A DNA stretch of 64,000 nucleotides from Saccostrea cucullata (taxonomy: Eukaryota). The position numbers and the translations under genes were made by a program. The notes under the pieces are model-generated. The model was not told the origin of the DNA, ran no database searches, and was given only the letters and a program-made list of their open reading frames with translations. Shown here one piece after another: positions 21,510-43,961 of the stretch; the first letter of the stretch is position 1, and every line of letters starts with the position of its first letter. The DNA is taken from positions 1 through 64,000 of the forward strand of contig NW_026938294.1 of assembly GCF_032062105.1 (NCBI RefSeq), read 5' to 3'.

Positions 21510-24500
21510 CTAACAAGTGTACCAAATAAGATACTCGGGATAGGACTGATTTCTGTCATAAACCACAAACTCTCGGTCTGAAAAGGCTCCACCATTGGCC
21601 ACTACACTGTCATGGATTTCCTGATGAGTCGAACACACAGGGTTTGTACAGATTTTACATGGTGGTCTTTTATAATTTCCGCCTGAACTGGTCAGATAAA
21701 TGTCACCAAGACTCATTCTTACCAAAAACATTGGGTAACGGTTTTTGCTGTCACATCCTAAATAAAAGAAACTGATATATTAAGAAATGGTTGTAAAAAA
21801 ATTTTGAAAAGGATTTGACCAAGTTGTTCAACTGTTTAAATTTTCTATAATTTTGGAGTTATATAAATATTGAATGTACTAAATATTCCTACAAATTCAA
21901 TTTTAGTCTTTTTTCTTTGCATATGCATTTTTTCGTAATGCTTAACAGTTAAGGACCAGGACCTGGTTGTTATGAAAACTTTTGAAACGTTATAAAACGC
22001 ACTCCATGCTCAAACTGATACTCTGTTCTCATAATTATACACAAAATTATTATTAAAATCAGAGAGGAATTTTGAGCTTAAGTATTGTTTTGTAGTACAG
22101 AGTTTAAGCACTAAGTATGTACTCTTCAATTTTTAGAACTTCCAATAAGTCCATTGTAGTGTTTGGGGATTACCTGCATATGAATGTGACTTGGAGGCTA
22201 CTTCAGCTCCATACACTCCCGCTCCGAGTCTTCCGTTCGCTGCAAGCCGACTGTCCAATCCTTGACTGCAAATGACGTCAACATAATGAGACTTCGTGGC
22301 ATGGAAAAAATAGTACTCATTTATTTCGGAATGAGTATGTTTCGTCATTGAGGGATCCAACGAAGCCATTACTTCTACAGGCCCATGGGACTGTGGAATT
22401 TTATCCAGTGGGGTGAAATTTCCCTCTACGCTTGCTTTTCGGAATAACCTCTGGCATTCTTCTCCATACTTAAGAAACAGTTCGACATTTTCTAATCTCT
22501 GAATGCTGACAATACGTGCATTTCCTAAAGTCTTTTTTAACGTACTTTCAATGGATCCATGAGTGACTTGGTCAATATTTTCTAAATGGAACTTTCGTGA
22601 TTTTACTTGCAGATTCCACCATTTGAGCTTTTTGTCGGAGGTATATTTGGTCCAGTAGGGTGGTGATCTGAGCGCTTCTCGATATTTGTAATCAAGGTAA
22701 GCTTTTGTGCCTCGTTGTGGAATTGATTCCAAGTTTTTAGGTCTATTAGGGACTGAAGCGACTGAAGAAGTTTTACCTTTAATAAAACATGGTTAAATGA
22801 ATTAAATAACGTAATACTGATCAGTAATTCATGTGCAATGTATTTCTACTTAGTTTATTTATTGTATTTATACCTGAAGAATTGACCTGATTTATTTCGT
22901 CCCTGAATGCCTGTGAATATATAAGCAAAGATACAGAATTTTAATTTCATATACTAGTAATTTTCATTATAATTTTTATCAAGGTATGCTTATATAAATA
23001 TAGCTCAAATATATATTAGCTGCTATAATTACTCTATATTATATCTAGTGTGTGGGAATGAATTACAAAAATATACACTTACATTTAATACAAACTAACT
23101 ACATGTTTTTACTGTTGTCTTACACAAATGAGTATTTACCGTTTCCAGTTTAGGCAAATCACTACTACCCCCATACAGCACAATTCGTATATCTGAAATA
23201 CTCTGTTGCTGTCGGTGCTTAGAAAATTTTTCTATAGAAGTTACTGTTTTTGCGGCTGCCACGTCTGCAGGAAATTTAAGATTCCCAGTTCCGAGAGCGG
23301 GAATTGCTATGGATGTGTAGCCAGTATTATTTGCTTTCTCTAGACAACCCAAGACGAAGTCCTCTAGCACCTACAATGCGAAATCCCTAGCATAAAGATC
23401 CAACTATCTATTTTTTTTTTTTTTTTATTGTGGCATATCTGTTAGAAGTTACAAGATTTATTTTTGCTAACCTCATCAGGAAGTTTCGTACTTGCGGAAC
23501 GTTTTGAATACCATGGTAACAGAGTGCCATGATAAACTTCGTTGCAGCTCAGATTGTGTCCCTTTGATACAGCAATGTCGCCATGATTAATTCCTTGGGG
23601 ATAATTTTGAGCCAGTTCTTGAGATAACCCATGTCCAGCTGCTGTACCTATTGCAGCAGACGTTCCTGACGTCATTGCAAGATCATGGGCAACGCTGTTA
23701 ACAATGACGTTCACCTATTTGTGAAATGGTCATGTTAGAACTCAATATTTAAATTATAATATATTTCTGTATCGTAACATTTTAAGTATAAATTGAAGCA
23801 TTCAATATTTATGAATGATTATTGGTTGAAAAATGTCTTTGAGCTTTAATGAATGATAAAAACATAGTGAGGTTTACCCTTTGTTCAACAAGACTCCCAA
23901 CCAAAACAGTGACAGGAATACCCCCAACCTGACCAGAACATGACTGTCGGGTCATAGTACTCATGGCTTAAATGATACGAAATTACAAATATATGCAGAT
24001 TTTAAAACTTTTAAAACTAGAATTATTTTCCACATTAAAAAGATATAATGCCTATGCAAAACAAATTTGCATTCAAAATCAAAAGGAATTTTTTAAAACA
24101 ATATTATCACAGATAACTCAATTTATGCCGCTATGAGAAATATATTATATTTTACACCTTAGGATAATTCTGCATATCCCTGCGCAGTCTGCAGGATATG
24201 CGCCTTTATCGCAGCGCAATTTCCCCCTTAATGATTTGTTTTACATTTTACTTTATGTCATTGAATTAAATGATATATTCGACAAAACTGCATATCTGTG
24301 TTTGGTTATTTTTCACTGCATTATCAGGCTGATATTTCTCATAGGAGGCATAAATATGAAATCTGGTTGAATGCAGATTAATAAAATAAAAAATACTATG
24401 TATTTGAATATTCATATTCATGTTACACAAACCTGGGGTCCCTGGAACCGCGGTGACCCTCGATGATCCTCCTTTTAATTCTGTCATAAATTCCTAAAGA

Positions 24501-27500
24501 AAACAAACTAAAGTTTTCAGTCAATAAACAAATAGCAATTTACAATTATTTTCGAAAATTATATAATATTAATTGAATATGAAGTTCATAAAAATTTGCA
24601 ACTGCTTCTGCCCTACTCTAGATCATGCTTATGGTTTCTAAATGTAAGATACTTTAAATCATTTCCAAATACTTATTGTTTTGTGTAATTTTTATATAAT
24701 AATAAAAATCATTTAGCTATTGGAAGAATATTAAAAATACCAAGAAAAACATTTGACTTTCCAGAATATATTTTATATACATTTCTGCTTATAACCAGTA
24801 TATTTTCAAAGACAAGCGAAGTCGTAATATATGTAGAAGACCATAAGTATGTACATGTATATATGTATTTTATTTTGGAAATTTTGCAAAATGTTGTATT
24901 AGGAGAAGACTTGTGTCTAATCCTTCTGACTCTTTGTCAATAAAATATGTTCAATTAAATTCTAAGTTTTGGCAGGAAAACTAAGGAACATATAGTAGAT
25001 TTCTTAACAATCAATCATTTGCACAGAACAGTGATAATCAGAGGTGATACTTATTAATTAATTGCAAAGCAAAACACAAAAACGGAAGCGGTTATCGCAA
25101 TACTTACATTTTGAACATTGGACCAGTCATGGCTTCCATTATACACTACAATGCTAATTTTCCTGATAGTCATACGAGAATGTTTTGTAGTAAAATCTCG
25201 TATTGCTTTAACCATCAGTTTTGCTGTTTGATCACTAGGATAATGTAAGGATCCAACTCCAAGCGTTGGAAAAGCAATGGATCTTGAGGAATGATTATTA
25301 GCAGTTTCCAGACACTTTTCCATGAATTTCTTTAACGTCTAAAATACCAAACAATATGAATATCAATTGAATCAAAGCAATTTACCAAAGAAAACGTGTG
25401 TGTAAAACTACCTTAGGTTTTGTTTATCCTTCAATTTAATTCATATTTTAGAAAATAAGTACGGGTCTCTGTAAGAATCAGGCAATGTGTGTATAAAAGT
25501 GAATCATGAGGGTTTTCAGAATTCGATGATTTTACACACATAGGTTTCTCTTGCACTATGAACCACGTATGTAAAATGAAAATTATTTTGGGTCCTGGTT
25601 ACTATGGAAACATGGCCAAAGAAATTTTCCCTAGCAACCAGTCAATTTTCAATGAGAATGGACAAATATATCACTAAACTTAGAGGCTTGAAATGGAATG
25701 TGAATATTATCAGAGCGGTTCTTAAATAATGTTATCATAAAGATAAACATTTCAAATAATTCAAATAATAAAACCATGTAATACACGGAATTTTTATTAT
25801 TAGATATTTCTTTTATGGGCAATGGAAGATATGCATGTTTTGCATTTTTTGCTGATTCAGCATTTTTGTTAATTTGGGCAAATTTCAAGGCCTTATATCT
25901 CAAACTTCTGGCACAATACAAGAGTATGGTATATTTTACATAAAGGCAGAGGAATATACCTTTTGGAATATAAATTCAAAAACGTGTGTTTTTTAGTATT
26001 GACAGTTGGTTGCCTAGCAACAAAAATGGATGTTTTGATTAAGAGAAAGAGAAAAATTGCCAAATGTGCGAGTTATTTATGGAATAAAATCTTATCGATG
26101 AATACCAAAATCAATTTTTAAAGTAAAAACATATTTCTGAGACTTTAATGAATCAAGGAATATTTTGCAAATACTAATCACCATAGCATCAGAAACTCCT
26201 CCATAGCAACAAAGGAAATAAACCCACTTTTGACACACACTCATATATATGTTTTTAAAGATTATTCAACGTTTGACTGACTTCAGTGATTTAAGTGCAT
26301 CAGGGCATTTTTTTGTACTTTATAAGTCCCTAACCTGTGAAACTGGAGGGGGCTTTAGGTTTCTCTGAGTCTGTCCTTCGGTATAGCTGTCCCCATGTCT
26401 GTCTGTAAGTCTGTCCTACTTAATTGGATTTCCGCACTTCTATTCTAAACGCTTGTAGATATCGAGCTGAATTTCTGCATGTGAGTGTATCTTGGTGAGT
26501 TACAGATCAAGTTTGAATGTCGTTAAAGCTCATTGATTTTTGATAAAATGGCGTTTTAATTTTTTCATAATGGTTTAAGATCGGGTTCGTGCTGCGCTAA
26601 ATTCCAAAGGTCAACATGGTAAATATGAAGCCAAAAGAAGGTGTTGAAAAAATGAGTTGAATTTCCGTCTTTATGGTTTTTTTTATTAAAGGCATGCATA
26701 TACGCAAAATTTTAACATCAAACGCTTTTTTCTTGGTCATAACTTTTGCATGATATTATAAATTGACGTTCTAGAGAAAAGGGGGAACCCGGTAGGGGAC
26801 ATGCATTGCTTCCGCAATAATCTCAAAATGCTTGTTAACCTATGGCAGCAACACTGAGCATGTAGCTATTATGAAAAGTTATAAAGCACCATCATCTATA
26901 ATGACCTGAACATTTATAAAGGAGCTGTAAGTGAGATATGTACTGTCTCTGAATTTCAGTCTTAAAACTCCCTTTAAAGTCTGTGACATTGTCATTGAAA
27001 GGTATGCAAAGAATAAGTTGCTATGTGTCATTGTTACCATGGCAACATGTCATAAATTTTCAAAAATATGGCATTTTTTAACATGTTTAGAGTGTTATAG
27101 TTAACATTTATACCTAAACAAGATTCCAGGCCATATAAGTTAAACAAGTTTTCTTTCGATCTCAATCTCACAGTTAAAGGTTGATATACATGTACAACAA
27201 AATATTAGAGAAAAGAGCCTTGAAACATTTTCCACAACAACAACCACAACAAGCCTTCAACTGTAAAATTTGCATGTTTTTATTTTATCCTACATTTTAA
27301 AAAAATCACATTTCGAGTGAGCAATCAGGTGCAACGAAATCGAACTTTGTATACCCGTCTGACAGTGCCGATTTATGAGAAATGTTCAGCTTTACATCTA
27401 AATGTACCCAAGAAAGTAAATTCCAAAAGCCAGGCACGTATCATCGATTTTGAAAGTGGGGAGGCCAGCCAGAGAAAATTTTTTTTTACTTACCTAAACA

Positions 27501-30500
27501 AGTTGACAAGGAAAAAAAAAGAATAAGTTCTCCAAAGACGAAAATCCTATTTCGTGGGGGGTGGGGGGGGGTGGGGGGGTGTTAGAGACCAACTTTTTTC
27601 GGTGCCAACATCTTTCAGTACCGATTCATTATGCTATATTTTCGTTCTACAAGAAAAAGTGGGGGGGGGGCAAACAGCCCCCCCCCTCGGTTGCTAGGTG
27701 CCTGAAAGCAGCAAGGTATTACTTTAAACCACTGGTACTTTGTTGTTGCTCTACTGGTCAGAGACCAGAAGAGCTTATGCGATAGTAATGCGTCCGTTCG
27801 TCCGTCCGTTCTCACGAAATAATGGTTAAGTGACAGTTTTTGTGCCCATTTAAGATTTATGTGACTCTTTTGTTTTATGTGACTGTCACATACAAATTTG
27901 ATTTTTTTTAGCAGAAATGAGTGTTATGTGACTTAAAAATCATTCTAAAGAAGTGTCACATAAAAAAATACGGACAATATTGTCCGTATATGGACGTCCG
28001 TCAAAAGGTTTTGAGATTTACCTCCCTTACCCCATGTATCATGTTTTGCGCCACATAATTTTTTTGGAAAAAGTCACATAAATTTGTCAGTCACATAACC
28101 TGCATTTCGTGGGTCTGTCCGTCTGTTTGCCCGTCTGTCTGTCTGTAAACAGTTTTTCAAAATGCTACTCCTCCTACAGTTTTGGTCTGATTTCAATATA
28201 ACTTGGCACACCAGTAGACTACACTAAGATACATAATTCTGTGTATCGGTTTTGAATTTCGATGAACGGTGTTGCCGTGGTTACTAAAAAAAGAAATTTC
28301 TGTGAAATTCTTTCAAAATGCTACTCCTCCTACAGTTTTGGTCTGATTTCAATATAACTTGGCACACAAGTAGATTACACTACGATATATAATTCTGTGT
28401 ATCGAATTTGATTTCAATGAACGGCGTTGCCGTGGTAACTAAAAATAGAAATTTCTGTGAAATTCTTTCAAAATGCTATTCCTTCTACAGTTTTGGTCTG
28501 ATTTCAATATAACTTGGCACACAAGTAGACTACACTAAGATACATAGTTCTGTATATCGGTTTTTGATTTCGATGAACGGTGTTGCTGTTGTTACTAAAA
28601 ATAGAAATTTCTGTGAAATTCTTTCAAAATGCTACACCTCCTACAGTTTTGGTCTTATTTCAATATAACTTGGCACACAAGTAGACTACACTAAGGTACA
28701 TAGTTCTCTGAATGGTGTTGCCATGGTTACTAAATATAGAAATTTCTGTTAAATACTCTCAAAATGCTACTTCAAATACAGTTTTAGTCTGATTATAATA
28801 TAATGTGGCATGCAAGTAGACTACACTAAGAACATAAAGATACTTAATCAAGGATCATTATTCTATTTATTGCTGTTGAAAAGTTTCAATTTCCAACTGC
28901 TTAAGTACTTTTCTCTTCCTTTGCTATACGTACAAACCAGTAGAGCTTCAGTCTCGACAGAGACTTCTGGTTTTTGTGGTCACACTGCAAGGTATAAAAT
29001 GCTCAAATGTTCTTATGTTTTTGGTGTTGTGGAGTTGCAAGGTCCTGAAAAAGATGTGTTCATGTCACAAATGCAGATTCAGGGCCGGTGTGCCCCCCCC
29101 CCCTTTTTGAAGATTTTGTGCATGTAGAGTAGAATATATAAAATTTATATGTCCACTATCCTAAAATCAAGGAAAAAACATCTTTCATTTGTGGACCCCA
29201 ACTAGTGACATGCCCTAAACCCACTGGGAACTTCAATGCAGTCCAGGACCCCCGGTCTTCTACCCCACCCCCACCCCCATGACAAGATTCCTTGATCGAC
29301 TTTCTTGAATTTTCCTGTTTTTTTTCTCAAGATAGGAGCAATAGCCCAATTTAAGTAAACTAAACAGATAGCTACTGAAACATACAAATTAATGTTGAAG
29401 TCAGAAAATCTAGTGGGTACAGGTATTCTAAATAATGCATGAATTAGAAGTCAGATTTTTCAAATATAAAAAAACCAACATTTTTTTATTAAATTCAAAC
29501 ATTTGGAAATGAAGTTATTCTTTGAAAATTAAGGTACGAGTACATCAATGGCATTAGGAATTCTATTTATTTTATCTCAGTTTAGTTCAGTTTATTGAAG
29601 TCAAGTTTCGAACCTGCGACGTAAGGATTGACTCAATACTTTATGACTCTATAGAGCAGACGCTCTAACTACTGCGTCACGCGGGCGAAAAGAATATATA
29701 CAGGTAACTCTTGATGGCTCGAACTTCGATCTCTCGAAGTTCTTGATCGCTCGAAGTCAGTATCCGGTCCCGATTTTTTTCCCTATATAACTAAGCAAAT
29801 TTACTCTTGATTTCTCGAACTCTTGATCTCTCGAAACCCTTGATCTCTCGAAGTCAAAATGTAGTCCCGCTATGCATATTCTATTAAAATTTACCCTTGA
29901 AACCTCGAAGTGGCTATGTGTATACAATCATGAATGTTACACAATTACCTGGACATTTAAATGGTCCAAGGCAGAAGACGCGGGTCTCGAGAAACGGGAT
30001 GTTTATACAGGTGACACTTGTACTGCTAGGTGATAATTGATTTATAGTTAATCATATGTTGCCTACATGCTATTAAAAAAATTATCATAGACTGTCTTAC
30101 GATAATTCAGAGAAGCGGTGTGAATGAAAAATAGTAAATTGAATACAAGACGAAAAACTAACTAGTTTAATTTTTATTCGAGTCAGTGTCAAAGGTTATC
30201 GAAATATGAAAATGCAGAAACAGCCTCAATGTCAATATTACGACTATTGTTGCACAAATACTTACAGAATCCCGTCCAACGTTTAATGATATTGTTTGAA
30301 GTAGTCAATGCTATGTACGACGCGGTAAAATGTCGTTTTTATTTAACGAATGCGTAGTTTGACGTCTGTATCAAAAAGAATACATAAATAAACTTGAAGT
30401 GACGATGTACATTTTTCTATTTACTCAATTTAATAAATATATCTACCATACGAAAACATACGGTGCTGTTTTATAAAAACCACGTGTAAAGGGTTAGCAC

Positions 30501-33500
30501 TGCATGAAAATTATTACATTCGGTAAGACTAATTTCAAAACCGGTCAACAAACCCGGAAAATTCCGGACTCTTGAAATCTCGAACTCTTGATATCTCAAA
30601 GTTTTTTCTCAGTCCCGCGGATTTCGAGGTATCGAGAGTTACCTGTATACTTTGTGTTACAGTTTCTATCGAACATGAACAATTTTCCTAAGCCTAGCCA
30701 ATGAAATTAATTTTTATGCGCCCGAATATTTTTGTCCTGTCTAGTTGTTTGTCTGTCTGTTATCAACTTTAACCTTCGGCATAACTTTTGAACCGTTCGA
30801 GATAGAGACTTCATATTTGGAATGCATACTCCACTAATTTAACACTTTCAACTGACACGAAGGTCAATGAGCTTGTGACCTTGACTGTAACCTATATGCT
30901 AAAAATAGCTTTTTAGAACTTTGTTGCGGCCGGGCGCATAGTGTTTCACAAACACATCTTGTTAACATTTACAATGCAGTCATCATTCTTTTCTATCCTT
31001 TTTTGGAGACATGCTTGAAGAATACAATTATCACAACTTAAAACCAGAAGTCTCTGTCGAGACTGAAGCTCTACCGGTTTTTACTTATAGCAAAGGAAGA
31101 GAAAAGTTCTTAAGCAGCTGGGAATTGAAACTTTACCACGGCAATAAAAAGAATAATGATCCTTGATTAAGACTCTTAATGTTCTTAGTGTAGTCTACTT
31201 GCATGCCACATTATATTATAATCAGACTTTAACTGTATTTGGAGTAGCATTTTGAGAATTTTTAACAAAAATTTCTAATCTTAGTTACCACGGCATCATT
31301 GAAATCAGAAACGGATACACAGAATTATGTATCTTAGTGTAGTCTACTTGTGTGCCAAGTTATATTGAAATCAGACCAAAACTGTAGGAGGAGAAGCATT
31401 TTGAAAGAATTTCACAGAAATTTCTATTTTTAGTAACAACAGCAACACCGTTCATCGAAATCAAAAACGGATACACAGAATTATGTATCTTAGTGTAGTC
31501 TACTTGTGTGCCAATTTATATTGAAATCAGACCAAAACTGTAGGAGTAGTAGCATTTTGAAAGAATTTCACAGAAATTTCTAATCTTAGTAACAACCGCA
31601 ACACCGTTCATCGAAATCAAAAACGGATACACAGAATTATGTATCTTAGTGTAGTCTACTTGTGTGCCAAGTTATATTGAACTCAGACCAAAACTGTAGG
31701 AGGAGTAGCATTTTGAAAAATTATTTACAGACAGACGGACGGACGACGGACGCATTATTATCGCATAAGCTCTTCTGGTCTCTGACCAGTAGAGCTAAAA
31801 ACACAATATTTAAGGGTTTTCTTTTCCCTGACGAGTTCAATATAAAATTCACCTAATTCACAATATATTACCATAATGTAATATGTTTTCTGAAAAGGGT
31901 ACATAGTGCGGTGTGCAAATATAATTATGTATTGTTGTACAATTTTTAGTGTATTGATGTATACGGTTATACTTATTGAATACATCATAACACCCCTCCT
32001 TTTAAATAACACTATATTTCATTTTAAGTTACAAAAATAGTTTGATTAATCTTTTAAAACTAATTCTTTTCAAGTTTAAAAAATACACACAAAATTAGAG
32101 AGAATTTGTACACTTCGATTGATTGATTGTGTTTATTGTTAAACGTCTCTCTCAAGAATTTTTCACTCACATGGAGACGCCACCACTTGCTGGTGGAGAG
32201 CTGCAAATTTTGTCCTATACACGACATTGGGGAACATTGGGCAAGGAGCGATCTTTTTCATGCCAGCACCTACTGCGACATGGGTCCTCTGTTACAACAC
32301 ACTTGATTTGCATTTAATGTAAACTAAAATTTATTGAAATTAAGTTTTCATCGTCATACCACTTATGCAAATTAATATATCTGGTTGTAGCATAGGCATC
32401 GGTAGCGGTGGGGTCTACACACATAATGTAAACATTAAAAATTGGGGGGGGGGGGGGGGGGGGGTTTCAATTTGCTACCGACAGCTATGCATAAGAAAAA
32501 AGAGTTTGACTGAGAGACCTTTTACGTGTATAATCATCTTCTTGTTCTCAACGAGAATAAATCAATACATGTAAAATCAAAACGTTTTTTCAACAATATA
32601 ATTATTACAAATTAATTCTCTCAATTACTAAAATCTATAATTTTTGTTTAATAAATTTTATTCAAATTGTGTTAAATGTCCACATGGTAAAAAAAAGTTT
32701 ATGAACACTCTAATTGCATTAAAAAAAAATTTCGTGCTAGATGAAGATGTGCTTTTATTGTAAAAAAAAAAAAAAAATATCATATATCAATTATATATAT
32801 GATATATAAATATTTTTTTAAACAGCTGGAGCAAGCCCCTGTGCACCAAGATGCATTTTGTAACTTCATAAAAAGATTGAGCATGAGGAAAGCTTAAAGT
32901 GTGGTAAAAATTGTAAATCATGCTTGCTTTAACATCTATCCGTCTAATCAAGCTACTCTTAGTATACATGCAGTGTTATGTAGGGATTGTGTCTGTCACT
33001 GTCTGACCTGACACATGTGTACATTGTCTCTCACTAATGTGTGTTAATGTAATATTTTTATTGCGAAATGTACCGGGGTCGGGAGAGAGTCAGGACAGAG
33101 GCCTCTTCAGGTCTCACAATTTTCAAAGCAGAGGAATCTCGGGTTTAATGCATGAAAGCCAAACAATGGAAAGAAAAAGCACAGGAGCTTGCTCCCAGCG
33201 TGTAATAATTAAATAAAAATCAAATAGGGAGAAATACAAGGGAAGTTATTGGGAAGCAAAAATGCTTCAAAATGCAGAAAAAATGAATATTCACTTTTAA
33301 AATTCTTTTACACATATCATTTGCACACCGATTTTTTTTTATTTAAAATATTTAATACAATGAAATATTGATCTTCATGTTTCTATGCTGAATTTGTAAA
33401 TCATTGTATTTATTTGTTTTAAGCCTTTAAAAACCGAGCAGAATTTACCATATTTTGATATTTTCCAGTAAATAACATGACCACTTACAAGTGTGAAATT

Positions 33501-36500
33501 AAAATTGAACCGTAAACGTTCTTTGAATCTCTAGCATTGGTTTAAAAAAAAAAATTAAACACAAATTTGATTATCTCCTTTCATTTCTGGATATCTTTAT
33601 GAAAAGTGCAGATTTTCATGATTTACAGAAATGAGAAAGTTTGCATCACGTTTCCATGGCAACCGAAGTTATAATTCAAAAATACTTATAGATCTCACAA
33701 TCAATCACACATTTCTTTAAAATTATGATAGAAAAAATCCAAATCTATAACTATGCGATGCCAATAAATTTTGATAATTACGGAGAATTGGTCTTAAAAT
33801 GCTTATGTACAGAGAATTTCAAGAATAACTTGAGCTCGTTGTTGTGTATAATTTTATCATCGTTATAAACTCGGCAATACTGCTATGCATTAATTAAGAA
33901 CAAAAATTACTATTGTTAAAGTTCAACACTATTCTTATGTATACTAAGTCATCATTTCTAGACGAAAATAATCAAAACTGTAAATGAGTGCCTGTCAAAA
34001 CTGGATTTATTTCCTTTGTTGCTATGGGGAAGTTTCTGTTGCTATGGTGATTAGTATTTGCAAATATTCCTGGATTCATAAAGAAGTCTCAGAAATATGT
34101 TTTACTTTAAAAACTGATTTTGGTATCCACCAATAAGGTTTAATTCCATAAATTAACTCGCACATTTGACAGTTTTTCTCTTTCTCTTAATCAAAACATC
34201 CATTTTTGTTGCTAGGCAACCGATTGTAAATATCAAAAAACACACGTTTTTGAATTTATATTCCAAACAGGATATTCCTCTGCTTTTATGTTAAATATAC
34301 CATACTCTTGTATTGTGCCAGAAGTTTGAGATATATGGCCTCGAAAATTGCCCAAATTAACAAAAATGCTGAATCAGCAAAAAATGCTAAACATGTATAT
34401 CTTCCATTGCCCATAAAAGAAACATCTAAAAATAAAAATTCCATGTATTACATGGTTTTATTATTTGAAATGTTTATCTTTATGATAACATTATTTAAGA
34501 ACCGCTCTGATAATATTCACATTCCATTTCAAGCCTCTAAGTTTAGTGATATATTTGTCCATTCTCATGAAAAATTGACTGGTTGCTAGGGAAAATTTCT
34601 TTGGCCGTGTTTCCTTAGTAACCAGGACCCAAAATAATTTTCATTTTACATACGTGGTTCATAGGGTAAGAGAAACCTATGTGTGTAAAATCATCGAATT
34701 CTGAGAACCCTCATGATTCACCCTTTGTCTGATTCTTACAGAGACCTGTACATAATTATAATATTAGAATTACTGATGATGGATCAGGTTGACTTGTGCC
34801 CCAATTTGGCAGAGCCCCGTGGTACACAAATTTGCATGGAAGTTGATAACCTCTACTGACTGAAACATCTCCGTATTCAACACCATTGGGATAATTATTG
34901 TTTAGTTCATCTTGCATTTGTCGACCAGCAATCCTCAACAAAGCTTCAGACAATCCTCCATTGCTGAGTTGTAAGTCTTTTGGTCCACTACACACTAACA
35001 CATCTGCCTGTACCGTTCAACAAAGCATTTTCATCATATAAAAGGTATGTTTTTCCAATTTGATTGACATTGAGATATTATAGGTTGAAAACCCCTAAAT
35101 GCATCTTAATTCGAGAAACGGGGTTTACTCAGTATTCTGGGATTCTATGAATACTTACGTGAACACTATTTAACGCGCCTACAATGACCTCAACGTCTGG
35201 TTTGCCAATTTTAGCGCTATTTTGTGGACCTTTTTTCGATACATGTGGCTGTGGAGTAGGATAATGGACCTCTGAATTATAAGAAAGAAATAAATATTCC
35301 TCGATTACTAGTATACAAACTCAAAAACTAATAGATTCTATTATTTAACTGTATATATATGATAATACGCTTTTGTTACAACTCCAAAATCACATACAAC
35401 CTCACCTGCCTGTAAAGATGTATATGTTTTAGCCACTGTCAAGAATGTCTGCAAGTAAAATGAATAAAATAAGTAGGAGGAAAGAATCAAGTTAAACAAG
35501 TCGATAAAACCACTTTACTTCGAAAAGCATAATAGGTATCAGTCTCAAAGTACTGAATATCCTCCTCGTAATTTAACCTGTTGGCAATTTTCCATGCCGA
35601 GTCATTACATCATATATACTTTTAAATTCCTCATTCAAGGTTAACCATCTTTGAAGTTGTTTTATTTATCAATTCTTACGTATTAAAAACTATCATTGAT
35701 TTATTACGAAAAGGTATCAATAATATTTTTATTAACTAACTTAACTAACATTTGAAAACACTTCTGAAAATGATTCTTGGAAAGCAATTTTTAAAGAAAT
35801 CAATGAAGAAATGAAAACAAATATTAAAACATATATCCGGATATAAAACATACTTCCGAAAAAAGCTCATTTTTGATAGTTAAAAGTAAAAGTGAACTTA
35901 TTCAGATTATATTTCTAGATCAAAACAGTTAATCTGAAAGAAGGACATAACAAAAAGTAATCAAGCTCAAAGGTTAATTTAGACATATAAAATTTGAACA
36001 AACAGAGATTGAACAAATATTAACATCCAAACACTTCAGTTCATGTGTCAAGAAGGAGTAAGGATTCCTTGTCAACCGATTCCAAGTCGGGTTTTTTAAA
36101 TAAGGAATTTATATTGCCCTGAGTTCCACAACTTACCTTGAAAAGATCGTGATCTTTCTTGAAGATCACAACGAGGACTTCCTGGAGTGATTGTGGAGTA
36201 ATATTTTTTATACAAGTTAACATAATTTCGGCAACAGTTGTTGCAGGGTATCCAAGCCTTCCAGCACCAAGCGCGGGAAAAGCGATCGTCTGATGGCCAT
36301 CTGATTCCGCTTGTTTCAATGAGCCATCGATGAGATTTTCAAGTGTCTGAAAAGAAGTAAGTGTAACTTTCATTCCTATCTATATGTCTTATAAATTTTA
36401 CGTGTCATAAAAATATATTTCTAAATTAAAATTGTACCCAATATGTTCATCGTATAAAAAAGTACTTTTTTCGTAAAAAAAGAACAACAGTGTAATGGAA

Positions 36501-37210
36501 TCAAATGCTGAATATTATAAACCTGTTCATCTTGTTTTGAAGAATATTTTGACAGCGCCCCGTGATAAATCGCCTTGCAAGAAAGTTGTCCCCCAGAGGT
36601 AATGGCAATATCTCCGTACTGTATCCCATTAGGGTATTTCTGTTGGCATTCCCTCTGAATTCCGGAACCAGCAGCATTTAACAAAGCCTTTGAAGCACGA
36701 CCTTTACTCAGGTCAAGGTCACACCCATTGCTATTTACTATTACATCAACCTTGAATCACAATGAAAGGACAAAGGGTCAAAACCCAAGATTGAATCTTC
36801 AAATAATGAAAAATGAATTAATCAGAGAAAGAGGTAATTCTAAAAATGATTCTGCCTATCTCAGTTGAGTACTGAATCCTATTTATAAAAGACAGTAAAC
36901 TTTTTAAATCTTTTCATTTCTTTAAAAAAAGAAGGAAATGACATTATCATTTTGTTACTATTTCAACATACGGAATTTGTTGGATGATTTTAAATACTTT
37001 TACTCTGTCTTGTAAACCACTAAACCGTACTCGTTTTCATTTTTTTTTCTTTTGGTCGAACAGTGTCGTTTAAGTAATATTTTAGAAAGGACAGTTTATG
37101 AAATAATTGAGAACACTCCCAGTTACCTGTTGGTCAGAAAGGTTTCCCTTAATAACACGAACTCTGATATTCCCCACAATAACGAATCTGCTACCGCCAT
37201 CTGTTGCCAT
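21510..37210 (-). CDS. Macro-PARP copy C: intact three-macrodomain ADP-ribosyltransferase (PARP14/15-like architecture, H-Y-E triad), 879 aa
   Basis: 14 coding exons with GT-AG ends and consistent phases: 37210-37127, 36750-36523, 36346-36137, 35448-35406, 35271-35159, 35007-34774, 25338-25108, 24493-24433, 23966-23878, 23714-23472, 23370-23140, 22910-22874, 22761-22174, 21757-21510 (sum 2640 nt). Macro motifs (VIVNS, IAFPALG(A/T)G) occur three times; PARP motifs FHAT, GVYGA, SKS, REFVVY, QSYPEYLI. Confidence 0.92.
26320..26835 (+). mobile_element. HINE-like element
   Basis: gtccctaacc / ggtaggggac subterminal pair, (GTCT)n-like tract and 3' hairpin followed by cttgtt. Confidence 0.5.
27746..28975 (+). 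mobile_element. pearl/CvA-type Helentron-associated element with 156-bp tandem core (about 4.3 units)
   Basis: Subterminal inverted repeat gctctactgg / ccagtagagc, (GTCC/GTCT)n tract, core units starting at 28161, 28317, 28472, 28628 and 28763, 3' hairpin agtctc-gaca-gagact. Confidence 0.85.
29603..29686 (-). mobile_element. tRNA-derived SINE head
   Basis: Minus strand GCCCGCGTGACGCAGTAGTTAGAGCG...CCTTACGTCGCAGGTTCGAA; shares agtcaatccttacgtcgc with the SINE at about 47200. Confidence 0.65.
29701..30645. mobile_element. Tc1/pogo-type MITE
   Basis: TIR CAGGTAACTCT(T/C)GAT with TA flanks and repeated subterminal ctcgaa motifs. Confidence 0.85.
30712..30963 (+). mobile_element. Short HINE-like element
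   Basis: tatgcgcccg / cgggcgcata subterminal pair, (GTCT)n tract and 3' hairpin gtgtttcacaaacac. Confidence 0.7.
31040..31797 (-). mobile_element. Second copy of the pearl/CvA-type element, inverted relative to 27746-28975 (about 3.3 core units)
   Basis: Reverse complement of the left copy, including both termini and the 156-bp core. Confidence 0.85.
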
Positions 37211-38543
37211 CACTTTACAGTATCAGGAAATTTTTCTTTACAGAGATACCGAAGCTAAGTGACACAAGTCTGGAATTTTGAAAAAGGAAGGAAAAATGTA
37301 TGCGAATCCTTGATAAAAATTTCATTTTATATTGATAAATATTAATTTAGGCAAATTTGCTATAGACATGCTCGAATATCACGCTCCATTTCCTACTCAA
37401 AAAATTATGAAATTACCAAATTTGGGGGGATTTTTTTCGGTTATAAACATAAGGTAGAAGATATTTTTATTAACTGCTTCCTCTCTGATATAACCCTAAT
37501 TTAAATATCCCTGAATTTTTTATGTGTTTTTTTTAAAGTTAATTTGGCCATACAGGGTAAGGTCTGTCATAAGTTGTACTTAATCTCTATCTTTACTTCT
37601 GATTAAAAAAAAAATTAAATGCTGCATATAAAGGCTAAACATCAGACTTCCTGTCCTAAAACATATTCTAGACGCCTTGAAAATAAGAAAAAATGATTCT
37701 CAAAACTACAAAAAACATTAAGAAAATTTTATTTATGTTGAAATGTTTTCAAAATATAGACCATGTATCTTTTATATGAAAGACAATTGCTGTTACTCTC
37801 GGATGTTGAGATATTGCTGAGCGTTGCAAACTGGCAATATCTTTCAATCCTTGTTCAGTGTTAACCATGATCTCTTGGACATCTTCCACAAGTCTTTATA
37901 GTCTCTCAAAGCAAGACAATTTCTAAATGACTGCAAAAGTAAGCAGTATGTACACTAGCCTCAGGATAATGGTTCATTATTTTATAGTTTAGAGTAAAAT
38001 CAAAGGTAAGCATTATATTCAACTTGCTTTTATTAAAGTGGCAATATCACGCATCTTTTTTTGTCCAGAAAGTGTTTGTTCATAAAAATAAATCTTCTTT
38101 TCCAGAACAGAAAGGACACTTATATGTGTTCATTATTTTATAGTTTGAAGAACAACAGAACCAAGATCAAAGGTAAGCGTTATATTCAACTTGCTTTTAT
38201 AAAATTAAAAAAAACTGGCTTGTTTTTCAATCTGATCTCTGTAAACTTGCCGATGATTTATACAATCAATGCATATGCTTAATAATCTTTACTTTTAAAA
38301 AAATTATTACTCTCTACTCACTCTGAATTTGAATAATCTGAATAAATTTTCAAACATGTCGTATAATTTGAGTTGAATACAAGTATTTTACCACGCGAAC
38401 TCCAACCCAAATGTTAAACCCAAAGAGACCATCTGTAATAATTCCCCTTGATTTTTTTTAGGTTACTCTATTTAAATTAACTTTAAATGTCAATTTTTAA
38501 AACTAAATTTTTTTTTTCATTTTCAAAGCATGTAAAATCTTAC

Positions 38544-38665
38544 CTGTTATACACTTTAAAAGTCCTGCTGTCGAACCAAAGCCAAACCGAAAGTAACATT
38601 ACTCAAGCTGATATTTACAAGTTTATATATTTTTTTCCAGAGCTTTTTTGATAGCTACAGGAAGT
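38544..38665 (-). promoter_or_regulatory. Putative promoter and non-coding exon 1 of copy C with IRF-element-like site and TATA box
   Basis: Donor CAG|GTAAGA at 38544; AAACCGAAAGT at 38584-38594; minus-strand TATATAAA at about 38622-38629; ACAGGAAGT (ETS-like) at about 38657. Confidence 0.55.
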
Positions 38666-41600
38666 TTTTTTTTCAGAATCCAAATTGATCAAATCGACCT
38701 AGAAAAATTGAACAAAAATGAAATTTGAAAATAACTTTTTTTTTACAAATCGGTCCCAAAAAACACGAGTCAGGAAAAGGATCCAATTGTTATTTTTCTT
38801 TCATTCGGAAGTTCATCAATAGAGTTATGAAAAACCACAAATGTTTGCTTCAAAATTATAACACATGTAATATCAAATGAAGGGAACATTCTTAACCATA
38901 TGATATTGAGATATGTATATTTTCAAAATGTAATACTTCAACTTTTATCAGCAGATTGCGAAAAAATGTTGTACAGAAAATACAAAGAAAGTTCGTTTTT
39001 CCCTCTTGAAATAAACCATAGTAAATATATAAAAAGAAAAACGGGTATGATACAAATGTTCCTAATATCTGTTCAGTATTTTTATTACATCCCATATAAG
39101 CATTTTTCTGCAAATCCGTATTAATCACATAAAATGTTGCTAGTATTGTATTCTATAATGTATAGTGTTATATACATATACCAACATTACACAATGCGCA
39201 TTAACAAAGTGCATGAAAGTTGATGAAAGATATGTAAAAAAGCTAGATGTAATTGAATACAAAAAACCCACAATCTAAATTGAATTCCGTGATGTAACAC
39301 TGGCTGAAAGGAAATCAATTCCTATATCTATCACATGCAGTGCAGGAATATCCCTCTGTCCCACTTTAGAGTTAATTTACAAACGAAAATCACTTCTGGA
39401 AACTAAGGAGCTTTTTCTTAATTTGAAGTGCTCAAAAGCTGGTTTCCGCTAAAATTACAAGGGCTTATAAATGTAGTGTAAATATACCGTCCATAAAATG
39501 ATATTTTTTTCATAAAACATTTGTCAATATTTTCTCAAAAGTGGAAATGGAAAACAAAAGTTTTGGTATTTTGTAATTATGTTTTTTACTTAAAATCATA
39601 ACACACGAATGATTACAAGTTACAAGCACACAATTTATTATCACAGTCAAATTTATCACTCTTTATATCAACACATTAATATTTATCACAATTTCTTGTT
39701 CAATAGATTATCTATACCAAATAAGGTACTCAGGGTAGGACTGGCATCTGTCATATACAACAAACTCACGGTACGCGAAGCTTGCCACAACACTGTCATA
39801 TATTTCCTGGTGACTGGTACATACCATCTGACCACACTTCTTACAAGGTGGCCTCTTAAAACTACCAGTTTTAGTTGTCATGTATATATCACCAAGACAC
39901 ATTCTCATCAGAAACATTGGACGACTTCCATTTGTATCAACTCCTAAAACGATCATATTCATAATTAGTAATATAATGATAATTATCATAATTAGTATGT
40001 CTTATAATATCTAGTTCTTTTATTTCAAATTATCCAGAATAACATTTTATAGAACAAGGTGCAAAGATCCTACCTTGAAATATTTTATAACAATTTTACT
40101 CAAAGAAATTCGCAATTTATTAAACATATTTTTTGTATTAAAATGTTCAAGTTATCTTGACATCTTTACTTGACTTTTTCATTTTACTAAGTACCTGTAT
40201 ATCCATCGGATTTTGCTGAATCTTCTGCACCATAAACACCTGTTCCAAGTAATCCTCCTGAGTAAGCTAATCTGTTGTCCAGTCCTTGACCAGTGATAAC
40301 TGAAACACAGCCCGGTTGTGTTCCATGAAAGAAGTAATACTCGTTGATTTCGTGATGTGTGTGATTTATCATTACAGAGTCCAAATGACCCATTGTCTTT
40401 GCCGGGCCACTTGAACCATTAACCTTGTCCAATGGAACAAAGTTTCCTTCAGCTATTGCTTTTCTAAATAGTCTTTGACATTCATCCGAGTATTTCGAAA
40501 AAAGTTCCACATTTTCGATTCTTTGAATGCTGACTATTTGTTTATTACCTAATGTACTTTTAAAAGCTTTTTCTATGCTTTGGAACGTGTTTTGATCTAC
40601 GTTTTCTAAATGTGTTGCTCCGGATTTCACAGCTAAATTCCACTCTTTGAGTTTCTTTTTGTTGGTAAATTTTGTCCAGTAAGCTGGAGTACGAGCCTCC
40701 TCTTGGTATTTCCAGATCAGATAATTCTTTGTTCCACGTTGTGGCATCACTTTAAGACCTCGTCTTTGGATATGTCTGTGGTGATTTCTGTGTGCTGAAA
40801 AATCACCGGCCATGAATCAAATTCATTGAATTTTTTAAAATTCTTTTTATTTTCGTCCGCTATATTATCTTATAAATAAAGAAAAATAAAAGCAAAAAAA
40901 AAATGGTGGTGTTTTAATTTTCTTTCAGATTATGCAATATACAATTTATTTATAAGCGTGTGCATAATTACCCCTTCCTCCATTTGCTCCAGATTCTGTT
41001 GACAATTCGGTTGTCATATGACTCAATTCACTCTGGAAGGCCTGTGGAGTTTCATTAAAAAACATAAGTTAATAATTGAAAAAAGTTTTCTTTGAACTTT
41101 GCTCTTTGAACTTTGCTTTTTAGTTTATTTTGAAAATTTTATGAAATATGATCCATTGATTTGCACTGTTTAAGTCACAATTTACTGCATTTTAGTACAG
41201 TTACTCTTAATCAGGAAGCAAGGGTACAACACTAAAAAAAAATAATCAAGACTAAACCTTTTCCAAATATTGAAGATCACTAGAACCTCCAAATAACACC
41301 ACTTGAATATCGGAAATAGTTTTCTTTGGAGTTTTGTTGCAAAATTTCTCAAATGCTGAAATCATACTGGAAGCTGCAATATCTGCTGGGATTTTATGAT
41401 ATCCGGTTCCGAGGGCAGGAAAAGCTATCGATTTATGTCCTGAAGAGTTGGCTTTCTGTAGACAATCCATAACAAATTCCTCCAAAAGCTAAAAAATAAA
41501 ATTCAATAACTATGATGACATACATGAATTTTCTAATAATAAATTTTAAATGTTCAGAACTCGAGTTATGTAATGTGTTTGGTATAGTCGCAACTATTTA

Positions 41601-43961
41601 TACCCATATCAACAAAGATAAAATATCGAACAAAGATCAAATATATTTAACTTATTTTCTTGTTTTTAAGATAACAATAAATGTAAATATATGAGACTAG
41701 AAAATTGTTTATTTTCTAGTCTCTAGAAAGACTAGAAAATCGAAAAGAATGTCCTGAAATTTTTTCTCCAGTTATAACTTCGCTACCTCAGCCGGAGGCT
41801 TTGTTGATCCTGACCGTTTTGAATACCACGGCAGCAGAGCGCCATGATATATTTCTTTGACTGAGGATATATCATGGGCGGCAGTGACAGCAATTTCGCC
41901 ATGTTGAATTCCATTTGGGTAATTCTGGGCAAGTTCGTTGGTCAGCCCGGCACCGCCTGCTGTGGCTACAGCTGCAGCAGTACCCGCCCCCATTCTTAGA
42001 TCTGGAGTGACACTATTCACAATGACATCTACCTAAAATACCAAAGAACCAAATAAATAACCTATCAAGTTCATTTATCATCATATTTCGTTTGACGAAA
42101 GAAAACTTGCCTTTTCTTCCGTGAGATTTCCAACTTTGACATTCACCGAAACGCTGTCAATTTTACTAGAGTATACAGTCTTTGTAACAGTTGCAGCTGT
42201 GGTAAAGAATAAAAACATTAAATATAAAATTCATATACATGTATAAATTTAAAATACTTTAAATTAGGCAAATCAAAGAATTATACATTTACTTACCAAA
42301 CGTCTGGCCTTTCAGTTCCTGAAGTATTTTCTGCAAAAGACATTCAATAACTTTTGAACCTTTTAATAAACCTTCGTGTACAAATATTGCCTGTAATATT
42401 CACCCTTCATCATTTAAACGAGTTATAGTAGCATAGTACAGCAGACTAATTTTCTGATATATTATTGATTATATGTACTTACAGATTGTGCTTGTGACCA
42501 ATTCTTTTCGTTGCCGTACACAACAATGATAACTTTCTCAATCTTTATGCTTATCTGACGATGTGTCATATTAAAGTCACGGATACATTGCACCATTAGC
42601 TTAGCTGTCTGATCCACAGGGAAATGTAGTGATCCAAGACCAAGGGTCGGAAACGCTATTGATTTTGTTGAATGTTTGTTTGCTTCTTCTAAACAATCTG
42701 ACATAAATTTCTTAAGGATCTAAGTGAAAACAAATTTTAAAAAACTTAATATATGATAGATGTAAAAAAAAAACATACCTGACAATAAAATTAGAAAAAA
42801 AAATATAACAGCACAGAAACAAAACAAAACTTTATTATTTACGTATGAGGGATCTGGTGAGTTGGATCCCCATTTCGGTAAGGCACCGTGATAAACATAA
42901 TTGCAATCCAGTTTATAACCTTTGCTCACAGCACATTCACCATAGTCGATGCCATTTGGAAAATTGTCGTCGAGTTCTTTTTGCATTTCTTCTCCAGCCA
43001 CATCTAGCAGTGATTGTGATAAGCCACCATTATTTAGCTTTAAGTCTTTTGGTCCACTACATACTAAAACATCTGCCTATAATATTCAATGGATACTTAG
43101 GTTTAGCAATCTTTAGGATTAGACTAGATCAGTTATCTTTTAAAGATTTCTGGCATATTAAAATACTTTTTTTTAAACATGGCATCTTTGATTTGGACAA
43201 TATGACCTAGATGAAAAAAAATCATAAAACTTAAATTTTTCAAAATGATTTTTAATATATTTTATTGACAAAATGTCAAAGGGATTGGACACAAGTTGCA
43301 AAAAACTCTGATAGTCCTCTCAAAATTTTTATTCGCTAAAGCTACAAAAATTTAGTCAGAGAGAAATCTTCAGCACAGTAGGCAATTGAAAGAGTAAAAC
43401 AAAATCTAATGTGTAATCATTTAACTGATTTAAGAAATTAGAAAAACTTGGCTAATTAAGTAAATCCTAGTGCGTACTTGAATAGAACTCAGTGTGTCCA
43501 CCACAACTTCAATGGTCATTTTCCCTATTTTATGACTATTAGACATTGGTCTTGTTTGACCTCCTTTACCTATAATAAATAAATACAAATCGTTGCTGTT
43601 TTTTTTTTTAGTTTGGAGTCAAATTGTTTAATCGTTCAAAAAATGTATAATGAACAACATCTATATTGAATTAAAATAAAGAACAAAACACGTGACCAAA
43701 TATCAGTTTTGTTTTTAAACTAAAATTCCAAATCACATCTTTTTAGAGTAATAGAGCGATGCATAAATTTACCTTTGTGAACAAACTTCTTCGCTTCCGT
43801 CAAAAATTTCTATTTGAATAAAAAAAAACAAACATATGAAGTTAATATTTAAATATATACGATGCATGCACAGAATACTGATGGTTTTTACATTCTTGCA
43901 TGATTTTTTTTTGTTTTTAAAAAAATTATTTTATTCTAATTTGCTTCTAAATAATTTCAAT

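What the first reader, a model, noticed from the sequence alone, without database searches (positions are those of the whole stretch)
21510..40794. Macrodomain PARPs that retain the full H-Y-E catalytic triad: candidate invertebrate reader-polymerase family
Seen: copy C has His (22301-22303, FHAT), Tyr (22211-22213, GVYGA) and Glu (21570-21572, DREFVVYD); copy D has His 40325-40327, Tyr 40232-40234 and Glu 39765-39767 (YREFVVYD). Established: vertebrate PARP14 and PARP15 have Leu at this third position and are mono-ADP-ribosyltransferases, and PARP9 lacks the canonical triad; H-Y-E marks PARP1/2 and tankyrases (poly) as well as PARP3/4 (mono). The proteins also lack the RRM/KH and WWE modules of PARP14. 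Inference: three ADP-ribose-binding macrodomains fused to a potentially chain-forming catalytic domain would give a self-amplifying read-and-write enzyme unlike the vertebrate macro-PARPs.
Basis: partly seen in the sequence, partly recalled or inferred. Interest (0 to 1): 0.82.

Follow-up and report, generated by a model that had tools for sequence, protein, structure and literature searches.

The report
Spiralian macro-PARPs with intact H-Y-E triad
A tandem array of mollusc genes fuses PARP14-type ADP-ribose-binding macrodomains to a catalytic domain that keeps the full His-Tyr-Glu triad of true poly(ADP-ribose) polymerases; this is a large, unstudied family across molluscs, brachiopods and annelids, and whether it makes chains is untested.

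Summary
His, Tyr and Glu lie at the stated codons in copies C and D. The Glu aligns with the Leu of PARP15, the Ile of PARP12 and the catalytic Glu of tankyrase-2.

It is not chance. About 25 paralogous terminal exons in this genome all keep the Glu. So do 141 of 144 catalytic domains of the wider family.

The family spans bivalves, gastropods, a chiton, a brachiopod and annelids. Its long members carry PARP14-type RRM, KH and macro domains. NCBI names them PARP14-like, PARP15-like or uncharacterized.

The catalytic domain is not the vertebrate PARP14 type:
- The family profile matches tankyrase best, ahead of PARP12, PARP15 and PARP14.
- In an unrooted tree it separates from classical H-Y-hydrophobic domains, which the same genome also encodes.
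- It has a conserved Cys3-His insert before the Glu strand.

Polymerase activity and "self-amplification" remain inference, because H-Y-E is not sufficient (PARP3 and PARP4). I found no paper describing this family. Verdict: a real, conserved new variant of macro-PARP whose product length is unknown.

The parts
21510..21757 (-). Copy C terminal exon: C-terminal part of the catalytic domain. Catalytic Glu at 21570-21572, Cys-x2-Cys-x4-Cys-x2-His insert at about 21624-21659, stop codon at 21510-21512.
22174..22776 (-). Copy C catalytic-domain N-terminal exon: His at 22301-22303, Tyr at 22211-22213, and the Lys and second Tyr of the tankyrase-like motif Y-x-A-E-x-x-S-K-S-x-x-Y.
22874..22910 (-). 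Copy C short linker exon between macro 3 and the catalytic domain. There is no room here for a WWE domain.
   Evidence: Read joints and phases.
23140..23370 (-). Copy C macrodomain 3, C-terminal half.
23472..23714 (-). Copy C macrodomain 3, N-terminal half. Its closest solved relative is PARP14 macrodomain 2.
23878..23966 (-). Copy C exon with the first strand of macrodomain 3.
24433..24493 (-). Copy C short linker exon between macro 2 and macro 3.
25108..25323 (-). Copy C macrodomain 2, C-terminal half. The upper boundary is approximate.
34759..35001 (-). Copy C macrodomain 2, N-terminal half, of PARP14 macrodomain-2 type. A 9.4 kb intron separates it from its C-terminal half, and no read evidence spans that intron.
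36044..36373 (-). Copy C macrodomain 1, C-terminal half.
36424..36750 (-). Copy C macrodomain 1, N-terminal half.
37085..37213 (-). Copy C first coding exon. The start Met runs directly into the first strand of macrodomain 1, with no RRM or KH upstream.
39708..39943 (-). Copy D terminal exon: Glu at 39765-39767, the Cys-x2-Cys-x4-Cys-x2-His insert, and the stop codon.
40195..40813 (-). Copy D catalytic-domain N-terminal exon: His at 40325-40327 and Tyr at 40232-40234. The donor is in phase with the terminal exon.
41261..45215 (-). Copy D macrodomain exons: macro 3 at 41261-41482, 41787-42032 and 42084-42230; macro 2 at 42477-42704 and 42840-43070; macro 1 at 44068-44286 and 44622-44759; first exon at 45102-45215.
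   Evidence: tblastn with copy C exons and open frames.
10385..11629 (-). Copy B catalytic exons. The H/Y exon (11030-11629) is intact. The terminal exon (10385-10622) is split by a frameshift and carries a TAG. The Glu codon is still present.

Best explanation
Copies C and D belong to a tandem array of short (Macro x3 + catalytic domain) paralogues of a large spiralian PARP14-like family. Bivalves, gastropods, a chiton, a brachiopod and annelids all have members.

The catalytic domain is a distinct lineage of the PARP fold. It never lost the catalytic Glu and keeps a tankyrase-like NAD+ site: H-G-T, G-x-G-I-Y-x-A-E-x-x-S/T-K-x-x-Q-Y and R-E-F-V-V-Y. It also carries a conserved Cys3-His insert, a probable zinc knuckle, in the acceptor loop just before the Glu strand.

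My proposed mechanism, all inferred:
- The enzyme is an active ADP-ribosyltransferase that uses its own Glu. It therefore does not depend on an acidic acceptor residue for substrate-assisted catalysis, as PARP10 and PARP14 are thought to.
- The zinc-knuckle loop selects the acceptor.
- The PARP14 macrodomain-2-type macrodomains bind ADP-ribose on the products or on the enzyme itself and hold it at modified targets.
- The setting is probably antiviral or innate immunity.

Chain length cannot be read from sequence. I consider mono-ADP-ribose or short oligomers somewhat more likely than long polymers.

Shown: the triad, its conservation, the fold, the domain architecture, the taxonomic spread and in-frame splicing. 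Inferred: activity, acceptor type, zinc binding, macrodomain reading and the immune role.
For: - The triad codons are as claimed, and Pfam finds PARP and Macro.
- The Glu aligns to the PARP15 Leu, the PARP12 Ile and the tankyrase-2 Glu.
- All distinct terminal exons of the family found in this genome keep REF plus the Cys cluster.
- Across 144 family domains: His 141, Tyr 144, Glu 141, Lys 140, and the three Cys 122-130 each.
- The big protein search gave 2803 hits at E<=1e-3 and 646 at E<=1e-10.
- Named members come from Mollusca, Brachiopoda and Annelida.
- Long members have RRM_PARP14_3 above Pfam's cut-off, weaker KH_PARP14 hits, and Macro.
- The family profile against solved structures ranks tankyrase-2 5e-27, PARP12 8e-24, PARP15 3e-21, PARP14 5e-18 and PARP1 5e-11.
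- An AlphaFold model of a spliced homologue (P0007:75-309) has pLDDT 94.4. It scores Z 22-23 against PARP15, tankyrases, PARP14, PARP10 and PARP12. The rmsd is lowest to tankyrases, 1.6-2.0 A.
- The same genome also encodes a classical WWE + H-Y-I gene and PARP12-like H-Y-I arrays.
- The tree splits the H-Y-E group from the classical group at SH-aLRT 97.
- Macro 2 and macro 3 are closest to PARP14 macrodomain 2, which is a reader (PMC10470015 abstract).
- Spliced contigs in RNA-seq runs join the H/Y exon to the Glu exon.
- Oyster genes annotated PARP14 are listed among antiviral effectors (PMC12803857).
Against: - There is no biochemistry for any member.
- The RNA contigs are 90-99% identical to the window. 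They may come from alleles or close paralogues, and contigs cannot prove transcription of this particular copy.
- Copy C is a three-macro gene only if a 9.4 kb intron filled with a palindrome is spliced, and nothing spans it.
- Copy B is broken, so some array members are decaying.
- The tree is unrooted and lacks vertebrate PARPs, tankyrase and PARP1. 'Never lost the Glu' is therefore favoured but not proven.
- The fold search does not separate tankyrase from PARP15 or PARP14 (Z values tied).
- Zinc binding is inferred from the motif alone.
- The immune link rests on annotation-level mentions that may refer to the classical PARP14-like genes.
Confidence: 0.62

Rival explanations
1. The enzyme is a true poly(ADP-ribose) polymerase. 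Its Glu activates the acceptor ribose hydroxyl for chain elongation as in PARP1 and tankyrase, and the macrodomains bind the product to give feed-forward read-and-write amplification.
For: - The full H-Y-E triad is invariant across the family.
- The family profile is closest to tankyrases, which are bona fide polymerases, and shares their Y-x-A-E-x-x-S-K-x-x-Q-Y motif and an ungapped donor-loop region.
- The model's rmsd is lowest to tankyrases.
- Four of the six human H-Y-E PARPs are polymerases (PMC9189837).
Against: - H-Y-E is not sufficient: PARP3 and PARP4 are mono-transferases.
- The acceptor loop is remodelled by a Cys3-His insert absent from every known polymerase.
- The macrodomains are of PARP14 macrodomain-2 type. 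By established knowledge that type reads mono-ADP-ribose, not polymer.
- No assay exists.
Confidence: 0.25
2. The enzyme is a Glu-dependent transferase whose main acceptors are not protein side chains but nucleic-acid ends (viral RNA or DNA phosphates). This would parallel DNA and RNA ADP-ribosylation by PARP1-3 and by PARP10, PARP11, PARP14 and PARP15.
For: - Long family members carry PARP14-type RRM and KH nucleic-acid-binding modules.
- A zinc-knuckle-like insert sits in the acceptor loop.
- Protist relatives fuse the same H-Y-E domain to ZNFX1/SF1-type helicases.
Against: - Copies C and D in the window have no RRM or KH domains.
- Nothing in the sequence identifies the acceptor.
- This reading is not exclusive of the other explanations.
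Confidence: 0.15
3. These are ordinary PARP14/15 orthologues. The Glu is an incidental or reverted residue without functional meaning, or the domain is catalytically dead.
For: - Annotation pipelines name members PARP14-like or PARP15-like.
- The macrodomains are PARP14-type.
- Copy B and a lone macro fragment are pseudogenised.
Against: - The Glu is as conserved as the His and the Tyr, 141 of 144.
- The same genome has a separate classical WWE + H-Y-I gene that resembles the vertebrate PARP14 catalytic domain much more closely.
- The profile ranks PARP14 below tankyrase, PARP12 and PARP15.
- The NAD+-site residues are all intact.
Confidence: 0.05

Closest known systems
Vertebrate PARP14 / PARP15 (macro-PARPs, clade 3)
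   Same: - Macrodomains lie N-terminal to a C-terminal PARP catalytic domain.
- Macro 2 and macro 3 are closest to PARP14 macrodomain 2.
- Long family members share PARP14-type RRM and KH domains.
- The genes are tandemly duplicated, as noted for PARP14-like genes (PMC4245714).
   Different: - The third triad residue is Glu, not Leu.
- There is no WWE domain, and in the window's copies no RRM or KH.
- The family profile scores PARP14 about 29 bits below tankyrase.
- A Cys3-His insert sits in the acceptor loop.
- A separate classical WWE + H-Y-I gene exists in the same genome.
Tankyrase 1/2 (clade 4 poly-ADP-ribose polymerases)
   Same: - H-Y-E triad.
- No helical regulatory subdomain.
- Near-identical G-I-Y-F/x-A-E-x-S-S/T-K-x-x-Q-Y motif and E-Y/F-V-I/V-Y strand.
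- Best profile match (5e-27) and lowest rmsd.
   Different: - No ankyrin or SAM domains.
- The tankyrase Cys-His-Cys-Cys zinc site lies in a different loop, after the Tyr motif, and is a gap in this family.
- This family's Cys cluster is in turn a gap in tankyrase.
PARP12 / ZAP-type catalytic domains (clade 3, H-Y-I)
   Same: PARP12 is the best single-sequence match among solved structures (5e-13) and has the same compact fold.
   Different: It has Ile at the third position, CCCH zinc fingers and WWE in place of macrodomains, and no Cys insert.
Sponge, hemichordate and bivalve classical PARP14-like proteins (Macro-WWE-PARP, H-Y-hydrophobic)
   Same: They are invertebrate, multi-copy and combine macrodomains with a PARP domain.
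   Different: They have a WWE domain and no catalytic Glu. A branch with SH-aLRT 97 separates them from the H-Y-E group.
Protist H-Y-E PARP fusions (choanoflagellate ZNFX1-like helicase-PARP, kinase-ankyrin-PARP)
   Same: The catalytic domains group with the spiralian family in the unrooted tree and keep H-Y-E.
   Different: Most have no Cys cluster and none has macrodomains. Their partner domains are different.

Membership tests
PARP catalytic domain superfamily (PF00644, ARTD fold) | Sequence match to the PARP catalytic profile | tested here: met
   The N-terminal exons score 33.5-33.7 bits against a cut-off of 26.7. The terminal exons alone score 20.5-21.1 bits. Spliced homologues score 60-80 bits.
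PARP catalytic domain superfamily (PF00644, ARTD fold) | ART fold with the H-Y-[E or hydrophobic] NAD+ site | tested here: met
   A homologue model has pLDDT 94.4 and scores Z 22-23 against PARP15, tankyrases and PARP14. The triad codons are confirmed in the window. The window's own two exons were not joined for folding.
PARP14/PARP15-type macro-PARP (clade 3C) | PARP14-type macrodomains N-terminal to the catalytic domain | tested here: met
   Three macrodomains by Pfam. Macro 2 and macro 3 best match PARP14 macrodomain 2. The macro 1 N-terminal half had no solved match at E<=0.01.
PARP14/PARP15-type macro-PARP (clade 3C) | Third triad residue hydrophobic (Leu); mono-transferase type | tested here: not met
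   Glu in copies C and D and in 141 of 144 family domains.
PARP14/PARP15-type macro-PARP (clade 3C) | Catalytic domain most similar to PARP14/15 among PARPs | tested here: not met
   Profile ranking: tankyrase 98 bits, PARP12 88, PARP15 79, PARP14 69. An unrooted split separates the family from classical domains.
PARP14 proper | RRM and KH array plus a WWE domain before the catalytic domain | tested here: not met
   None in copies C or D. RRM_PARP14_3 and weak KH_PARP14 hits occur in long family members, but no WWE was found in them.
Tankyrase (clade 4) | Ankyrin repeat clusters, a SAM domain and a Cys-His-Cys-Cys zinc site after the Tyr motif | tested here: not met
   Only Macro and PARP domains were found. 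The tankyrase zinc segment is a gap in the profile alignment.
Poly-ADP-ribose polymerases (functional class) | Intact H-Y-E triad | tested here: met
Poly-ADP-ribose polymerases (functional class) | Demonstrated elongation of ADP-ribose chains | not testable with these tools
   This needs an enzyme assay. H-Y-E is not sufficient (PMC9189837).

The most novel reading that the evidence does not exclude
Spiralian PARP14-like proteins carry a previously unclassified PARP catalytic lineage: H-Y-E, a tankyrase-like NAD+ site and a zinc-knuckle acceptor loop. This lineage is a genuine oligo- or poly-ADP-ribose polymerase. If so, these animals use a macrodomain-coupled polymerase in innate immunity, and the mono-only state of vertebrate macro-PARPs is derived or results from replacement of the catalytic domain.
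Probability: 0.25. Interest if true: 0.8.

Novelty: new variant of a known kind. Interest (0 to 1): 0.55.

Why it matters
The field treats macrodomain PARPs, and clade 3 as a whole, as enzymes that lost the catalytic Glu and became mono-transferases. In Citarelli 2010 (PMC2964712) only one Tetrahymena protein in the clade keeps it. A 2026 review of PARP14 evolution does not mention invertebrate H-Y-E forms (PMC13224862).

A family of hundreds of sequence clusters across Spiralia combines PARP14-type modules with an intact, tankyrase-like H-Y-E site and a new Cys3-His acceptor-loop insert. This offers a natural experiment on what decides mono- versus poly-ADP-ribosylation and acceptor choice. 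It also bears on how antiviral PARPs evolved. The family is directly testable with recombinant protein.

Tried and rejected
1. Rooted tree with human PARP1-16 and tankyrases: not possible.
   - The word searches returned only spiralian and protist proteins or unnamed sponge proteins.
   - The tree is therefore unrooted and lacks those clades.
2. The first AlphaFold model used a shallow 25-row alignment and was only moderate (pLDDT 72.9). It was replaced by the 114-row model.
I relied on HMMER alignments plus the fold match.
Exons were searched one by one by reference. Phases were checked exon by exon. Naturally spliced homologues (P0007, P0025) stood in for folding.
5. The Pinctada homologue's locus showed only a PARP-only gene call and no informative neighbours.
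6. The Vyas 2014 paper is not held, so a review was cited instead.
7. The macro 1 N-terminal half has no solved match at E<=0.01.
8. A Leu-to-Glu reversion within PARP14/15 is disfavoured but not excluded. Against it: classical H-Y-I genes coexist in the same genome, and the H-Y-E group clusters with protist H-Y-E domains.
9. Fold ranking cannot tell tankyrase from PARP15 or PARP14, because the Z values are tied.


Full report
**Setting.** The window is AT-rich eukaryotic DNA. It comes from a 1.17 Gb, 23,869-contig assembly. Its nearest named protein relatives are bivalve (Saccostrea, Pinctada, Mytilus, Pecten).

The minus strand holds a tandem array of macrodomain-PARP genes:
- Copy A is cut by the left edge of the window.
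- Copy B spans 10385-15829.
- Copy C spans 21510-37213.
- Copy D spans 39708-45215.
- A lone macro 1-like fragment lies at 49595-50573.

**Observation.** Pfam finds PARP on both exon pairs and Macro on six half-domain exons of copy C.

HMMER alignments place the Glu at the third triad position. It aligns opposite Leu in the PARP15 motif KLFVVFF, opposite Ile in the PARP12 motif SIFVIFE and, using the family profile, opposite the Glu in the tankyrase-2 motif AEYVIY.

The His aligns with the tankyrase motif LFHG. The Tyr lies in a motif nearly identical to the tankyrase motif GIYFAENSSKSNQY, including the Lys and the second Tyr.

**Gene models.** Contigs from public runs of the same organism label, some on record as RNA-seq, are 90-99% identical to the window. 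They show seven joints in the 3' half of copy C. After the stated cut shifts, all seven are GT-AG on the minus strand and keep one reading frame to the stop codon. These include intron 21758-22173, which joins the H/Y exon to the Glu exon.

Because identity is below 100%, the contigs may derive from alleles or close paralogues. They support the splice pattern but not expression of this particular copy.

Copy D has an equivalent in-phase GT-AG intron at 39944-40194. Both genes start directly with macrodomain 1. Only short linker exons lie between macro 3 and the catalytic domain. There is therefore no RRM, KH or WWE.

Exons were searched separately, and naturally spliced homologues were used for folding.

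Two caveats apply. Copy C's macro 2 is split by a 9.4 kb intron that holds an imperfect palindrome of about 9 kb, and nothing spans it. Copy B's terminal exon carries a frameshift and a TAG, also seen on contig C18530.

**More than chance.** A search of the whole assembly with the terminal exon found 34 matches. Every distinct one reads R-E-F at the triad position and carries C-x2-C-x4-6-C plus His upstream.

The exhaustive protein search with a spliced homologue (P0007) gave 2803 hits at E<=1e-3 and 646 at E<=1e-10. I counted residues in 144 catalytic domains taken from this search and from a word search:

| Residue | Conserved in |
|---|---|
| His | 141 of 144 |
| Tyr | 144 of 144 |
| Glu | 141 of 144 |
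| Motif Lys | 140 of 144 |
| Three Cys | 130/144, 122/134, 130/141 |

The Glu is thus under the same constraint as the NAD+-binding His and Tyr.

**What the family is.** Named members come from many bivalves, gastropods, a chiton, the brachiopod Lingula and the annelids Owenia and Dimorphilus. NCBI names are 'PARP14-like', 'PARP15-like', 'poly [ADP-ribose] polymerase 10/14/15' or 'uncharacterized'.

Long members (1200-2000 residues) carry RRM_PARP14_3 above Pfam's cut-off, weaker KH_PARP14 hits, Macro and PARP. The family therefore shares PARP14's overall architecture. The window's genes are short, PARP15-like truncations. In the tree, short forms arise several times among long forms. Macro 2 and macro 3 of copy C are closest to human PARP14 macrodomain 2.

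**The catalytic domain is not the vertebrate PARP14 type.** I compared a 114-sequence family profile with all solved structures:

| Solved structure | E-value | Bits |
|---|---|---|
| Tankyrase-2 | 5e-27 | 98 |
| PARP12 | 8e-24 | 88 |
| PARP15 | 3e-21 | 79 |
| PARP14 | 5e-18 | 69 |
| PARP10 | 4e-12 | |
| PARP1 | 5e-11 | |

A high-confidence AlphaFold model of P0007:75-309 (pLDDT 94.4, pTM 0.91) matches PARP15, tankyrases, PARP14, PARP10 and PARP12 at tied Z of 22-23. The rmsd is smallest to tankyrases, 1.6-2.0 A over 173-179 residues.

The same genome also encodes classical domains. One is a WWE + H-Y-I gene whose catalytic exons closely resemble vertebrate PARP14 and PARP10 (contig C9354). 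Others are arrays of PARP12-like H-Y-I domains.

In an unrooted maximum-likelihood tree, the spiralian H-Y-E domains group with protist H-Y-E domains (choanoflagellate helicase-PARP and kinase-ankyrin-PARP fusions). A branch with SH-aLRT 97 separates them from the classical sponge, hemichordate and own-genome domains.

The simplest reading is an old H-Y-E lineage that Spiralia combined with, or kept in, PARP14-type proteins. A reversion from Leu looks less likely. Without tankyrase, PARP1 and vertebrate sequences in the tree, this is favoured but not proven.

**The Cys3-His insert.** The insert lies between the conserved R-P-P and D-S-V. This is the loop that precedes the Glu strand, the acceptor loop of PARPs by established knowledge. 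It is a gap in tankyrase, PARP12 and PARP15. Tankyrase's own zinc site lies in a different loop that is a gap here. The model is confident in this region, with pLDDT 93-97 per block. Zinc binding is inferred only.

**Mechanism.** I conclude that these are active ADP-ribosyltransferases that use their own catalytic Glu. The structured acceptor loop would set acceptor choice. The PARP14 macrodomain-2-type macrodomains would read ADP-ribose. Macrodomains 2 and 3 of PARP14 are readers and macrodomain 1 is a hydrolase (PMC10470015 and PMC10499325 abstracts).

Polymer synthesis is possible, and the tankyrase-like site raises its odds. But H-Y-E is not sufficient: PARP3 and PARP4 are mono-transferases (PMC9189837). 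I put true chain synthesis at about 0.25-0.3. The 'self-amplifying' loop is lower still. An immune role is suggested only by family context and by oyster transcriptome papers that list 'PARP14' among antiviral genes.

**Literature.**
- Citarelli 2010 reports that in clade 3 only one Tetrahymena protein keeps the Glu (PMC2964712).
- Perina 2014 describes tandemly duplicated PARP14-like genes in invertebrates but not their triads (PMC4245714).
- A 2026 PARP14 review has no mention of invertebrates, 'H-Y-E' or 'triad' (PMC13224862).
- Full-text searches for PARP14-like with H-Y-E found nothing further.

I therefore rate this a new variant of a known kind: real, conserved and apparently undescribed, with its key functional claim untested.

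Noticed in passing
window:25499-34721: The intron between the two halves of copy C's macrodomain 2 holds an imperfect palindrome of about 9 kb. The arms are about 93% complementary, nested, and centred near 30,000. It reaches to within 38 nt of exon 34759 and 176 nt of exon 25323. It could be a foldback element, an inverted duplication or an assembly artefact. Copy A has only about 150 nt at this position.
   Followed up: partly
window:10385-15829: Copy B's terminal exon is split by a frameshift and has a TAG; the same lesion is on contig C18530. tblastn finds no macro 3 or macro 1 half-domain exons for it. It is probably a decaying paralogue with fewer macrodomains.
   Followed up: partly
window:49595-50573: A lone macrodomain-1-like exon set lies upstream of copy D. 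It has an in-frame stop at about 49652-49654 and no catalytic exons. It looks like a pseudogene fragment.
   Followed up: partly
window:53457-55136: An intronless 559-residue ORF on the minus strand carries two B-box zinc fingers and NHL repeats (Pfam). It is a TRIM-NHL-like gene next to the PARP array.
   Followed up: partly
window:62681-63130: An ORF with a weak BAG-domain hit (23.8 bits against a cut-off of 23.4).
   Followed up: no
window:24080-24350: Contig depth in the public RNA-labelled runs is very high here, up to about 17,000 against tens to hundreds on the exons. The stretch lies inside intron 23967-24432 and has many loose ends. It is probably an abundant repeat or transposon fragment.
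   Followed up: no
window:4027-4245 and 14723-15154: Two similar plus-strand ORFs contain a reverse-transcriptase-like Y-I-D-D motif, in or near introns of copies A and B. The one scanned (14723-15151) has no Pfam hit at E<=0.01. Assembly gaps (N) lie at 16230-16399 and 16734-16876 and were left untouched.
   Followed up: no
G000 contigs C18530 and C520 (loci L002-L012, L031-L041): Two other contigs carry arrays of the same genes. Some exons are 96-100% identical to the window, for example C18530:70935-71153. These are probably haplotigs or very recent duplications, so copy counts in this assembly are inflated.
   Followed up: partly
L075 (G000:C9354:5101-15100) and C17608: The same genome has a classical WWE + H-Y-I PARP gene with a 559-residue reverse-transcriptase ORF inserted in an intron (L075:6384-8063). 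Contig C17608 holds an array of single-exon PARP12-like H-Y-I domains.
   Followed up: partly
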